The notes: generated from the sequence alone by a model not told the origin. Shown: positions 32,801 to 35,612, counted from the stretch's first letter. The stretch is 64,000 nt of DNA from Euprymna scolopes (GCA_053919585.1 CM132783.1), one strand, 5' to 3'. Numbers and translations: made by a program.

Positions 32801-33359
32801 ATATTATTTTGCTATATCCCGCAAAACTACGACCTGGCTCATCTACCAACATATGAAAATAGGTTAGCATAACTTAAATATTGAGGAACTTTCCCCAATT
32901 TAAAATCCGTCAGCTTCTNNNNNNNNNNNNNNNNNNNNNNNNNNNNNNNNNNNNNNNNNNNNNNNNNNNNNNNNNNNNNNNNNNNNNNNNNNNNNNNNNN
33001 NNNNNNNNNNNNNNNNNNNNNNNNNNNNNNNNNNNNNNNNNNNNNNNNNNNNNNATTAAAGTTAGTACTAATAAATCAAACTCAACATATACTTGGCAAA
33101 CGCTACATTCTCTAATATTTTACAATACCTTTTCGTAATATCGTATTGTACGTGATTCAAAATATGTTCTATANNNNNNNNNNNNNNNNNNNNNNNNNNN
33201 NNNNNNNNNNNNNNNNNNNNNNNNNNNNNNNNNNNNNNNNNNNNNNNNNNNNNNNNNNNNNNNNNNNNNNNNNNNNNNNNNNNNNNNNNNNNNNNNNNNN
33301 NNNNNNNNNNNNNNNNNNNNNNNNNNNNNNNNNNNNNNNNNNNNNNNNNNNNNNNNNNN

Positions 33360-33665
33360 AATAACTCTGTCAATTTTCAGTCTACAGACTCGGAATTTGA
33401 TACACAGGGTACTGAGATTTGGAAAAACTTTTGTTCCCCGTTTTCGGCTAGAAATTTGGCTGTTAAGGAGTCAAAGTTAAACGATTAGTATCTTGGAGAG
33501 CTCTACCAAACTCCTCGCCAAATTTGGGTCTAAACACTTGAAAGTTTAGATATAGATCTGTTGGACATGGATCGTACTTAATAACTTGATTTGAGCCCAA
33601 AACAATAAATGTTAACGGGTCATAATAGTGGTCAAATTTTAAAAAAAATTGACCGCTTTTTTATA
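33360..33665 (+). mobile_element. Second, partial copy of the 2818-3244 Helitron-like family
   Basis: Collinear with 2889-3190 (aataactctgtcaatttt...gggtactgagatttggaaaaa...ctctaccaaactcct...ggtcaaatt). 5' end lies in the N gap. Confidence 0.85.
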
Positions 33666-33856
33666 TATATAAATCATACCATGTAAATGATTTTAATAAT
33701 ACTATTAAATAACCAGTGGTTCAAATGCATAATAGATAATTAGAATATAGAAAAAATAACAACGGATAAAATTAAGTACTCGTTAAAATAATGCACTCAT
33801 AAAAACATTGTAGTACGGGTGATGCACATCAATAAACACATACAGGAACAAAGTAT

Positions 33857-34235
33857 TTATTTATTTATTTAAATGCTGCTCACATCAGCATTATTTGGCA
33901 CAAGGCCAGGAAAGTGGGATATCCGCAGGCTCCCCTAAAGGAGGGGCACTCCTGCAATTTTAAAAATTGCCCGAGTAACCCCGTCGGCATTCCCCGGTCG
34001 GGGCGCCTCAGGCAGCAAGCAATAAACTTGCCCCACCGAAAAGCCCGGTGGCAAGGCCTGGGAGGGTGGACCTCCTAGGTATTACCCAGGCGGTGTGCCT
34101 CAGTCCAACAGGTGCTGAGCCGGTTCCCGGCCCCTCACCTGTTGGGCTGAGTGTCAAGTGACGAATCCTTGACTTGCACTACCCAGTCTCCATGCAGCCG
34201 AAGCCGCTAGGAGACATCCCATCATCTCAAGAGAG
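33857..34235 (-). mobile_element. GC-rich, highly structured non-coding retroposon (SINE-like or LINE 3' UTR)
   Basis: Perfect 16-bp TSD TACAGGAACAAAGTAT (33841-33856 and 34236-34251), (TAAA)n 3' tail on the minus strand, many hairpins. Confidence 0.9.
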
Positions 34236-35612
34236 TACAGGAACAAAGTATGCTACAAATTCAAGCAAGTAAATCAGTTGAGTATAAAAATAAACTAAAA
34301 GAAATATAATCGGATTATAATGATTTTTATATTTTATTAATATGATAATATATATTATTTATTATGGTTTATATCATATTTACTTACTCTATCTCTCTAT
34401 TCATTTGGAAATTTTGAAATCTTGAAAGTGTACATAGAACTTTGTTTTGATAGTTAATAGTATTTACTGTTAATTTTCCATGATATATTTTTTCTTGAAA
34501 AATATAAAATTACGTACACCATTTGCTAAATCTAAAATGGAATATTTAAATTCGATCGACTGCTATTAGAGTTTACATATTTAGGTACATAGTTATAATA
34601 GATAAATATGATTATTTTTTATATCTGTTTAATATTTCAAATTCTATCCTTAGTGATCAGTAAATTATAAGTATGAACATCGTATTAAAGTTGAACTATT
34701 ATTTTGGCCTTACATTATTTTTTGAAGGAAACATATCGTTACCGAATAAACTTTTCGAGGAAATATCACTGAAATTCCTTCATAAATTCGAAATAGTTAA
34801 AATTATTTATTTGCTTCAAAGTATTAATATAAAAAAAAACTTTTTAATGTAAATTAAATTATGACCAGCGAATTTCACAAGGGAAGTCGCCTCTGGTCAA
34901 AGCCCAAAAGTCAATCGTGTATAAATGTTAATGTATTTCAAGCATTATTGAGACACATATATTGATTGGTAGCGGTAACCTCTGGAAAAAATAATTATTT
35001 TAAGTACATTTCTGCATCACAAAGTCACCTAATTTAGGCAGCCGGAAAGCAGCACTTCGGTATTGTGCCGCACGAACGTGTTGTTATAGAAAAGAAAACT
35101 TAGCTCATAAAATCCTCGTTTGGGGATAAATATACTGTAAATGCGTTTTTGACAGTGGCTATTTATATGCAAACGTTTGTTCTGAAGATTTATCGAATAG
35201 AAGCTCAGTCGAGCACCTGCTTACAATATAAAAATAGAGCAGGAATAGGGTCACAACGAATCTCCTGTGAGGATACGATAATCAGAAAGAGAAAAGTACA
35301 TTGTCTTCTTGATTTGTAAGATATAGAAAAGATAGCCTAAAGCACCTTCTTCCCAGTTGTATTGTACTCTTATATAGACGGGAGCGCTTGATGCCATAGG
35401 AGTTTTACGAATTTTTAAGAATTTACTATTTGATAAAAGAAACTTAACTATAACTGCATTCGTGGACACAATGATGCATATACTAAGTTTCCGTTCTATT
35501 TAATAGGCGCTGACAACAACCTTTTCTTTGTAAATATTTTATGATTATTTCCAATGAATAAGTGTTATTTACTTTATTTGACAAAATTTATCGACGTTTC
35601 TTGCCCCCCCAA

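What the first reader, a model, noticed from the sequence alone, without database searches (positions are those of the whole stretch)
33841..34251. Young, GC-rich, almost fully base-paired non-coding retroposon with UUCG tetraloops and a closing helix
Seen: a 379-bp insert with a perfect 16-bp TSD and a (TAAA)n tail, much GC-richer than its surroundings, with no long ORF and no clean tRNA A/B boxes. On the minus strand (tail orientation) the helices are: GUCUCC-UA-GCGGC[UUCG]GCUGC-AU-GGAGAC; GUCAAG-GA[UUCG]UC-A-CUUGAC; a long CUCAG-C-CCAACAGGUG...CACCUGUUGG-A-CUGAG arm, enclosed with the previous hairpin by GUGC/GCAC as a three-way junction; CUUGCC-ACCG/CGGU..GGCAAG; UGCCUGAG/CUCGGGCA; GCAGG/CCUGC; a long-range UGGGAU/AUCCCA helix closing the ~300-nt domain; and two 3' hairpins (GGC-CUUGU-GCC, AAUGCUG/CAGCAUU). 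Several G-U pairs work only on this strand, which points to selection at RNA level. Established: a long TSD plus a simple-repeat tail marks target-primed reverse transcription by a LINE. Inference: either an undescribed SINE whose head is a large structured RNA (unknown Pol III RNA or ribozyme) fused to a LINE-recognition tail, or an unusually structured LINE 3' UTR.
Basis: partly seen in the sequence, partly recalled or inferred. Interest (0 to 1): 0.7.

Follow-up and report, generated by a model that had tools for sequence, protein, structure and literature searches.

The report
Stray copy of site-homing structured retroposon
This is one off-target copy of a short, non-coding, strongly folded jumping element of a cephalopod genome that normally lands at one fixed spot in the end-repeat of a copia retrotransposon and piles up head to tail there; it is real, but it is a variant of a known lifestyle, with no sign of a ribozyme.

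Summary
A 379-bp GC-rich insert (33857-34235, RNA sense on the minus strand) lies between perfect 16-bp target duplications. It ends in (TAAA)n, has no ORF, tRNA or Rfam match, and folds far better than shuffles (z -7.9).

It belongs to a family with at least 2,652 candidate copies in this 5.9-Gb genome. The 5' ends are fixed and never run into a LINE ORF, so it is a SINE-like non-autonomous retroposon, not a LINE 3' UTR.

About three quarters of young copies sit at one site (ATA^CCCCATTA) inside the ~310-bp LTR of a copia element, antisense to it. They form head-to-tail stacks separated by copies of the target. Independent 5'-truncated insertions at that same site show true homing. The window copy is a rare off-target insertion.

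Compensatory changes clearly support only the 3' terminal hairpin and one internal helix. I found no Pol III promoter, ribozyme motif or circular-RNA reads.

Earlier notes of this scan on other DNA (s1-295670, s1-247377, s1-295572, s1-268955) describe the same family and name a Tx1-type LINE.

The closest published precedent is SINEU/Tx1-Mar in crocodilians. Verdict: a new variant of a known kind.

The parts
33841..33856 (.). Target site duplication, copy next to the tail (TACAGGAACAAAGTAT on the plus strand)
   Evidence: identical to 34236-34251. Read in element sense, the target starts with ATAC, like the family's preferred ATACCCC site.
33857..33871 (-). 3' tail UAAAUAAAUAAAUAA, i.e. (TAAA)n
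   Evidence: Siblings end in AAATAAATA or AAATAAATAAATA.
33872..33892 (-). 3' terminal hairpin AAUGCUG-AUGUGAG-CAGCAUU, the likely reverse-transcriptase recognition element
   Evidence: helix 20: 4 of 7 pairs show double changes across subfamilies (AAUGCUG/CAGCAUU, AUUGCCG/CGGCAAU, UUUGCUG/CAGCAAA, UUUGGUG/CACCAAA), and 98% of cells are paired. The loop is AUGUGGG in nearly all copies. The window copy has G>A at 33880.
33897..33907 (-). Small 3' hairpin GGC-CUUGU-GCC
   Evidence: nearly invariant, so covariation can neither support nor refute it.
33915..34221 (-). Closed multi-helix domain of ~300 nt, bounded by UGGGAU (34216-34221) pairing with AUCCCA (33915-33920)
   Evidence: MFE (z -7.85); 94.9% of cells are paired. 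Double changes occur in the GCAGG/CCUGC helix (GCAAG/CUUGC, GCGAG/CUCGC), in the long arm (A-U to G-C in 8 copies) and in GCAAG/CUUGC. Most other helices vary too little to test.
33962..33966 (-). U5 run inside the element (AAUUUUUAAAAUU)
   Evidence: By established knowledge a run of T residues is a Pol III terminator, so Pol III transcription of the whole unit is unlikely.
34225..34235 (-). 5' leader CUCUCUUGAGA, the 'filler' inherited from the 5' junction of an LTR-resident source copy
   Evidence: this segment differs between stacks (CACCTCCATTG, AAAGGTCATTT and others), whereas UGAUGGGAUG after it is constant. The same filler is found in dispersed siblings L003, L005 and L017.
34236..34251 (.). 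Target site duplication, copy next to the 5' end

Best explanation
The insert is an off-target copy of a SINE-like, non-coding, non-LTR retroposon of a cephalopod. The family has no promoter of its own. A LINE reverse transcriptase copies it by target-primed reverse transcription, recognising the 3' terminal hairpin (conserved loop AUGUGGG, covarying stem) together with the (UAAA)n tail. The normal target is ATA^CCCCATTA, about 25 bp from the start of a ~310-bp copia LTR, and the element enters antisense to the copia. Each insertion duplicates 8 or 16 bp of the target, which recreates the site. Repeated insertions, plus local duplication, then build head-to-tail stacks. Inferred: source RNAs are transcribed from LTR-resident copies and start at about the A of ATACCCC, 26 nt downstream of a TATAAATA on that strand. 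The LTR-derived 5' end of such RNAs would let the cDNA end anneal to the upstream target, giving seamless junctions, as proposed for R2-type elements. Occasionally the machinery nicks a look-alike site elsewhere. In the window that site was ATAC..., which gave a 16-bp TSD and a copy lacking the CCCCAUUA leader. What the large folded body does is not shown; the most likely roles are RNA stability and/or binding of the LINE proteins.
For: - Copy number and ends: at least 2,652 candidate copies at 93-98% identity with fixed 5' ends; tandem periods of 382-388 bp.
- Junctions: stack junctions read tail|CCCCATTA|filler|TGATGGG.
- Identity of the flank: the conserved 290-bp upstream flank is a copia LTR. 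L061 has two LTRs 96% identical and 4,871 bp apart. RVT_2, gag_pre-integrs and Retrotran_gag_2 ORFs lie on the opposite strand, and a polypurine tract abuts TGTTGCAAT.
- Empty sites: 21 of 30 LTRs are empty and read GGGATCATACCCCATTA^TACATCCAAAATATTGCAACA.
- Homing: independent 5'-truncated insertions at the identical site start at nt 113, 189 and 20 (L033, L035, L037), and RNA reads show a further truncated copy (joint 1632>1875).
- Site preference: 421 of 565 copies with the exact young 3' end are followed directly by CCCC.
- Off-target sites: TSDs start ATAC, CCCCT, AACCC or ACCAGCCCC.
- Source RNAs: dispersed copies L003 and L017 start with (A)CCCCATTA taken from the LTR, as does C16:115105408.
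- Structure: covariation in the 3' hairpin and two or three other helices gives 137 double-change cells, against 57 +/- 6 when shuffled and at most 89 when slid.
- Published precedent for the whole lifestyle: PMC4494074.
Against: I did not see the partner LINE. The Tx1 assignment therefore rests on unchecked earlier notes. The promoter idea is sequence inference only. The polyA RNA-seq looked unstranded, gave no start or end pile-ups, and showed the LTR mostly from empty copies. The same LTR also has a plausible sense-strand CCAAT/TATA arrangement. Shared variants break as well as keep predicted pairs (40 kept, 30 broken), so most of the fold is supported by thermodynamics only. Part of the stacking could come from unequal crossing-over or from copia amplifying an already occupied LTR.
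Confidence: 0.75

Rival explanations
1. The LTR-plus-element composite spread because a copia lineage whose LTR had once been hit kept retrotransposing, and the stacks grew by unequal crossing-over. The element would then have little or no site specificity.
For: Many occupied LTRs share the same upstream 290 bp. One array has at least 18 near-identical units with a 388-bp period, which looks like local duplication. Units within one stack share the same filler.
Against: Different loci carry different 5' truncation points at exactly the same nucleotide of the LTR, and there are 40 different fillers. 21 of 30 closely related LTRs are empty. Off-target TSDs resemble the LTR site.
Confidence: 0.1
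2. It is a retrozyme-like or viroid-like element. Tandem DNA copies would be transcribed into multimers, cut to unit length by an unrecognised self-cleaving motif, circularised, and copied back into DNA.
For: The features that suggest it are the head-to-tail arrays, the ~380-nt GC-rich and almost fully paired unit, and a conserved hairpin spanning each unit junction.
Against: No hammerhead, twister, HDV-like, hairpin, pistol or hatchet match at E <= 1 on monomers, dimers or LTR junctions. The unit junctions are explained by target duplications of an LTR site that also exists empty. No back-joined reads appear within the element in three RNA runs, although polyA libraries are a weak test.
Confidence: 0.05
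3. It is a retropseudogene family of an unknown cellular structured RNA (for example a lineage-specific Pol III or snRNA-type gene), with a single-copy functional parent elsewhere.
For: The multi-helix fold is closed by a long-range helix and contains UUCG tetraloops. Some helices covary. An external TATA lies upstream in the source copies.
Against: No Rfam family matches. The 'upstream promoter' is part of a copia LTR, not of a gene. The 3' hairpin and tail, rather than a processed RNA 3' end, define the copies. A U5 run lies inside the element.
Confidence: 0.05
4. It is the 3' UTR of a LINE, seen as heavily 5'-truncated copies.
For: Very short 3' fragments exist (37 nt in L067, 46 nt in L076).
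Against: 82 aligned copies stop at the same 5' ends (nt 1-3 or 12-13) and are flanked there by TSD or target sequence, never by an ORF.
Confidence: 0.03

Closest known systems
SINEU families mobilised by Tx1-Mar LINEs in crocodilians (Kojima 2015, PMC4494074)
   Same: Both are non-autonomous retroposons without a Pol III internal promoter and with oligo-T inside. Both insert preferentially at fixed positions of another transposon, often in the opposite orientation. Some copies carry 5' extensions derived from the target transposon, which led that author to propose transcription from the flanking element. The same paper reports Tx1 families that prefer LTR retrotransposons.
   Different: Here the head is not snRNA-derived: it is a ~300-nt closed fold with no Rfam match. 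The target is a copia LTR, not a Mariner. The tail is (TAAA)n behind a covarying hairpin. Stacks reach many units. The host is a cephalopod.
SIDEs, internally deleted non-autonomous derivatives of R2/R1 in Drosophila (PMC3414825), and R2 co-transcript processing (PMC3774820)
   Same: Both are site-specific and rely on transcription from the target. They need only the 3' RNA element bound by the LINE protein, and target-derived sequence at the RNA 5' end.
   Different: R2 and its SIDEs carry an HDV-like ribozyme that cuts the co-transcript. No such motif was detected here. The target is a mobile element rather than rDNA. Whether the body derives from the partner LINE is unknown.
Classical tRNA-, 7SL- or 5S-derived SINEs
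   Same: Both are short and non-coding, have a TSD and a LINE-type tail, and occur in thousands of copies.
   Different: This element has no internal Pol III promoter or tRNA-like head. It has an internal U5 run and a strong site preference.
Metazoan retrozymes (tandem repeats with hammerhead ribozymes giving circular RNAs; recalled from my own knowledge, not checked here)
   Same: Both form tandem arrays of ~170-400-nt, highly paired units.
   Different: No hammerhead or other self-cleaving motif and no circular junction reads were found. The unit boundaries are target duplications.

Membership tests
Non-LTR (TPRT) non-autonomous retroposon, SINE in the broad sense | Short, non-coding, flanked by target site duplications, with a 3' simple-repeat or A-rich tail | tested here: met
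   (16-bp TSD, (TAAA)n tail). (other copies with TSDs of 6-14 bp). No ORF.
Non-LTR (TPRT) non-autonomous retroposon, SINE in the broad sense | Many copies with a common 5' end, plus 5'-truncated copies | tested here: met
   (5' ends at nt 1-3 or 12-13). (truncations at nt 20, 113, 123, 189, about 330 and about 343).
Non-LTR (TPRT) non-autonomous retroposon, SINE in the broad sense | 3' end shared with an autonomous partner LINE | tested here: inconclusive
   Filtered pattern searches found no LINE carrying the module. Earlier notes s1-295572 and s1-268955 report a Tx1-type LINE, which I did not check.
Classical Pol III SINE (tRNA/7SL/5S head) | Head derived from a Pol III gene, with an internal A/B-box promoter | tested here: not met
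   ARAGORN finds nothing. No tRNA, 7SL or 5S hit at E <= 10 in Rfam. A U5 run lies inside the element.
Target-specific retroposon (SINEU/Tx1-Mar type, R2-SIDE type) | Independent insertions recur at one nucleotide position of a repeated target | tested here: met
   (different truncation points and fillers at the same LTR position). (421 of 565 copies followed by CCCC).
Target-specific retroposon (SINEU/Tx1-Mar type, R2-SIDE type) | Transcription from the target's sequence, seen as target-derived 5' extensions | tested here: inconclusive
   L003, L017 and C16:115105408 begin with (ATA)CCCCATTA outside any LTR, which fits the idea. RNA-seq gave no start sites.
Ribozyme-bearing elements (retrozyme; R2-type 5' HDV-like ribozyme) | A recognisable self-cleaving motif at the unit or target junction | tested here: not met
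   cmscan at E <= 1 on arrays and LTR junctions (L007, L008, L009) and at E <= 10 on the window copy found no ribozyme family. A novel motif cannot be excluded.
Ribozyme-bearing elements (retrozyme) | Unit-length circular RNA | tested here: inconclusive
   No back-joints within the element in three polyA RNA runs. PolyA selection would miss circles.
LINE 3' UTR | Longer copies continue 5' into ORF2 | tested here: not met
   none of 82 copies does.

The most novel reading that the evidence does not exclude
The ~300-nt closed fold is a selected functional RNA module rather than mere GC-rich palindromic filler. It could be a scaffold that captures the LINE proteins, or a new processing or export element. 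In addition, the element would use RNA pairing on both sides of its target: the 5' UGAUGGGAUG with the top strand CATACCCCATTA, and the 3' UAAAUA with the primer strand. It would also hijack an antisense TATA promoter in the copia LTR. That would make it an RNA-assisted, promoter-borrowing homing SINE of a kind not yet described.
Probability: 0.15. Interest if true: 0.7.

Novelty: new variant of a known kind. Interest (0 to 1): 0.4.

Why it matters
The family shows that the 'target-specific SINE riding a site-specific LINE and borrowing its target's transcription' strategy also operates on a large scale in cephalopods. Until now it was documented for crocodilian SINEU/Tx1-Mar and, in another form, for R2 SIDEs. 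Here the landing pad is a copia LTR and the passenger RNA is unusually large and folded. The family offers a compact natural system for three questions: which 3' RNA hairpin a site-specific LINE reads, how 5' junctions are formed, and whether a retroposon can live off an LTR's promoter. For genome annotation it explains thousands of 'satellite-like' 380-bp arrays. The window copy itself is an ordinary dead insertion.

Tried and rejected
1. Rfam, on the monomer at E <= 10 and on arrays and LTR junctions at E <= 1: no meaningful hit. The tsr25, miRNA and Hovlinc hits are far below gathering scores and lie outside the element or on simple hairpins.

2. Retrozyme/circular RNA idea. I raised it when the tandem arrays appeared. 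I dropped it once the inter-unit linker proved to be a duplicated LTR target that also exists empty, and no back-joints were seen.

3. 'Composite element with its own 290-bp promoter leader', or a Helitron carrying arrays. Rejected: the leader is a copia LTR.

4. Partner LINE.
- Loci downstream of L002 and L051 (L062, L063) hold other short tandem repeats and no ORF.
- A scan of all fetched loci for the 3' module with a non-SINE upstream found none.
- Three 'not-SINE' pattern filters found only truncated or indel-bearing SINE copies.
- A junction filter showed another element class starting TGATGGGGAA. I did not try to read it by other means.
- A LINE next to a 46-nt fragment (L079) is a very abundant dispersed family with no shared 3' module in that copy, so it is not accepted as the partner.

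5. Metagenome scans for the TGATGGGGAA junction and for the 3' module: nothing found.

6. RNAalifold on 82 noisy copies gave a poor consensus, so I used the window MFE projected on the alignment instead.

7. Test for fewer shared variants in paired columns than in unpaired ones: no difference. Selection is therefore shown only for a few helices.

8. RNA-seq: low, two-orientation coverage, no starts or ends. It gives no verdict on expression as a discrete RNA.

Full report
THE OBJECT. The window holds TACAGGAACAAAGTAT at 33841-33856 and again at 34236-34251, and the match cannot be extended. Between the two lies a 379-bp insert whose minus strand ends in UAAAUAAAUAAAUAA. GC is 0.60-0.62 inside against about 0.2-0.28 outside. 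ARAGORN finds no tRNA, and Rfam gives nothing better than E = 0.4 within the insert. The minus strand folds to -183.5 kcal/mol, against -138 +/- 5.8 for dinucleotide shuffles (z -7.85). The plus strand gives -168 (z -6.9). The exception is GGCAAG, which pairs with the downstream CUUGC; a C-G to U-A double change in older copies favours that pairing.

A FAMILY WITH FIXED ENDS. A search of the window's own genome (5.9 Gb, 925 contigs) gave 2,652 first-look candidates. The 82 matches listed from the 40 scored candidates were mostly 93-98% identical, with a few shorter or more diverged. Their 5' ends fall at query nt 1-3 or 12-13, and none continues into an ORF. Very short 5'-truncated copies with their own TSDs exist, for example a 37-nt copy with a 14-bp TSD in L067. 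The window copy differs from its subfamily consensus by 10 substitutions and one 2-nt indel, about 3%. One of these substitutions hits the otherwise conserved loop of the 3' hairpin.

Most copies stand head to tail with periods of 382-388 bp. One array has at least 18 units. The junctions read ...GCAGCATTTAAATAAATA|CCCCATTA|11-16 variable nt|TGATGGGATG.... Many stacks are preceded by the same ~290 bp and followed by the same ~25 bp.

I first took this upstream piece for a promoter-bearing leader. Earlier notes of this scan on other DNA (s1-295670, s1-247377) suggested that it is a copia LTR, and I tested that. L061 carries two copies of it, 96% identical and 4,871 bp apart. ORFs between them match RVT_2, gag_pre-integrs and Retrotran_gag_2, on the strand opposite to the element's sense. 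A polypurine tract (AAAAAATAGGGAGGAGG) abuts the TGTTGCAAT end. The element therefore sits antisense to the copia, about 25 bp from the start of the ~310-bp LTR.

HOMING OR HITCH-HIKING. Of 30 closely related LTRs, 21 are empty and read GGGATCATACCCCATTA^TACATCCAAAATATTGCAACA. Occupied LTRs read ...ATACCCCATTA|element...AAATAAATA|CCCCATTATACATCC. The insertion thus duplicates CCCCATTA (8 bp), or CCCCATTACACATCCA (16 bp) when the second nick lies further downstream.

Different loci carry insertions truncated at nt 20, 113 and 189, yet joined to the LTR at the same position (L037, L033, L035). RNA reads show another copy truncated at about nt 243. I found forty different 5' fillers. Genome-wide, 421 of the 565 copies with the exact young 3' end GGGCAGCATTTAAATAAATA are followed directly by CCCC.

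These are independent events at one site, the signature of a sequence-specific endonuclease acting through target-primed reverse transcription. Because each insertion recreates the site, repeated hits build stacks. Near-identical long arrays suggest that local duplication adds to this. Off-target TSDs begin with ATAC (the window), CCCCT, AACCC or ACCAGCCCC, so they are look-alikes of the preferred site. Pattern counts suggest only a few dozen dispersed copies of the window's subfamily. The window copy is a rare miss.

WHERE THE RNA COMES FROM (INFERENCE). On the element's sense strand the LTR has TATAAATA 26 nt upstream of ATACCCCATTA. Dispersed copies L003 and L017, and one more found by pattern, begin with (ATA)CCCCATTA followed by the filler CTCTCTTGAGA, although no LTR is present there. 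Their template RNAs must have started in an LTR, 8-11 nt upstream of a resident element, at the distance expected from that TATA box.

The window copy starts at CTCTC. It descends from such a source but lacks the 8-9 nt leader. An LTR-derived 5' end would also let the cDNA's 3' end anneal to the upstream target and give the seamless junctions seen. This was proposed for R2-type elements and is discussed for SINEU in PMC4494074.

Direct RNA evidence is weak. In three polyA RNA-seq runs of the same species the element is covered at about 20-55 reads per orientation class, the LTR at 100-180, and the unique flank at 0. There is no strand bias and there are no start or end pile-ups. Most LTR reads come from empty LTRs. 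Promoter borrowing therefore remains a hypothesis. Note that the LTR also has a plausible sense-strand CCAAT/TATA pair.

IS THE FOLD SELECTED? I aligned 82 distinct copies (A1) and counted pairs for the window's MFE structure. 94.9% of cells are paired. 23 pairs and 137 cells carry changes on both sides, against 57 +/- 6 cells in shuffles (0 of 500 reach the observed value) and at most 89 in slid controls.

The signal is concentrated in a few places:
- The 3' terminal hairpin, where 4 of 7 pairs covary: AAUGCUG/CAGCAUU, AUUGCCG/CGGCAAU, UUUGCUG/CAGCAAA and UUUGGUG/CACCAAA, with the loop AUGUGGG kept.
- The GCAGG/CCUGC helix, with variants GCAAG/CUUGC and GCGAG/CUCGC.
- One pair of the long arm (A-U to G-C in eight copies) and one pair of the GCAAG hairpin.

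Elsewhere variation is too low, or consists of recurrent C>U and G>A changes. Shared variants are no rarer in paired than in unpaired columns, and 30 of 70 break a pair. The 3' hairpin is thus well supported as a functional RNA element, most simply the reverse-transcriptase recognition site. The rest of the fold is thermodynamically striking but not yet shown to be selected.

WHAT IT IS NOT. No hammerhead, HDV-like, twister, hairpin or other ribozyme family matches monomers, dimers or LTR junctions. No reads join unit ends within the element. There is no tRNA-like head. A U5 run inside the element argues against Pol III.

THE PARTNER LINE. I could not verify it. Several approaches failed. I did not try to read it by other routes.

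A LINE with Exo_endo_phos_2 and RVT_1 domains abuts, inverted, a 46-nt 3' fragment of the element in L076/L079. It belongs to a very abundant dispersed family and shows no shared 3' module there, so I do not accept it as the partner. Earlier notes s1-295572 and s1-268955 report a Tx1-type LINE with the same 3' end and target. I treat that as a lead only.

COMPARISON AND VERDICT. The closest published case is Kojima 2015 (PMC4494074). SINEU elements lack Pol III promoters, contain oligo-T and insert at fixed positions of a Mariner transposon, often in the opposite orientation, together with Tx1-Mar LINEs. Some carry 5' extensions from the target, and two Tx1 families prefer LTR retrotransposons. 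R2 SIDEs (PMC3414825) and R2 co-transcript processing (PMC3774820) are the other analogue, but they rely on a 5' ribozyme that is not detectable here.

Against these, the present family differs in host (a cephalopod), target (a copia LTR), tail, the size and fold of its body, and the extent of stacking. It is a new variant of a known kind, and this scan has already met it on other DNA. Two features are unexplained and worth a specialist's look. The 5' junction fillers almost always extend a hairpin (38 of 40). The element's 5' end is complementary to the target's top strand.

Noticed in passing
L007:1863-1883, L019:1870-1897, L028:1863-1882, L030:1863-1883 and 36 other junctions in the fetched loci: The variable 11-16 nt between the target copy CCCCATTA and the element's TGATGGGATG nearly always extends the hairpin CCCAUUA/UGAUGGG. 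This holds for 38 of 40 distinct fillers, with a mean of -11.4 against -7.9 kcal/mol for shuffled fillers. It could be a mechanistic palindrome or a selected 5' hairpin; this is unresolved.
   Followed up: partly
window 34212-34224 (minus strand UGAUGGGAUG) compared with the LTR site in L061:770-790: The element's 5' end is complementary to the top strand of its preferred target just upstream of the second nick (CATACCCCATTA). The RNA could therefore pair with both sides of the target.
   Followed up: no
G000:C7:20810368, C7:20811126, C7:20811883, C33:47113288, C33:47113668 and 24 other places: A second element class occupies the same LTR site and starts CCCCATTAC(TTCGTC)TGATGGGGAA, with tandem periods of about 758 and 380 bp. 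It is a candidate sister family or the 5' end of the partner LINE.
   Followed up: no
L079:76-2136 (+): A 5'-truncated LINE (Exo_endo_phos_2 and RVT_1) belongs to a very abundant, young family: at least 150 places at 96-97% amino-acid identity, many with open frames of 900-1,400 aa. It abuts, inverted, a 46-nt 3' fragment of the retroposon.
   Followed up: partly
L008:2073-2136: RNA reads in all three polyA runs show a 'goes back 64' joint inside the copia LTR, meaning an expressed LTR variant with a 64-bp internal duplication.
   Followed up: no
L061:5355-5372 and L061:800-830: In the full-length copia the LTR ends ...CTTCTAGAG rather than with the usual CA. It is followed by GGTTATGCGCCCAGCG at the primer-binding position. 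The polypurine tract is AAAAAATAGGGAGGAGG.
   Followed up: no
L063:7000-9380 (minus strand) and L062: Downstream of sibling copy L002 lies a long array of a different 200-300-bp tandem unit, which is also present in L062. I did not characterise it.
   Followed up: no
window 32900-33400: A stretch of extremely low GC (0.07-0.16 in 200-bp windows) lies about 450-950 bp from the insert.
   Followed up: no
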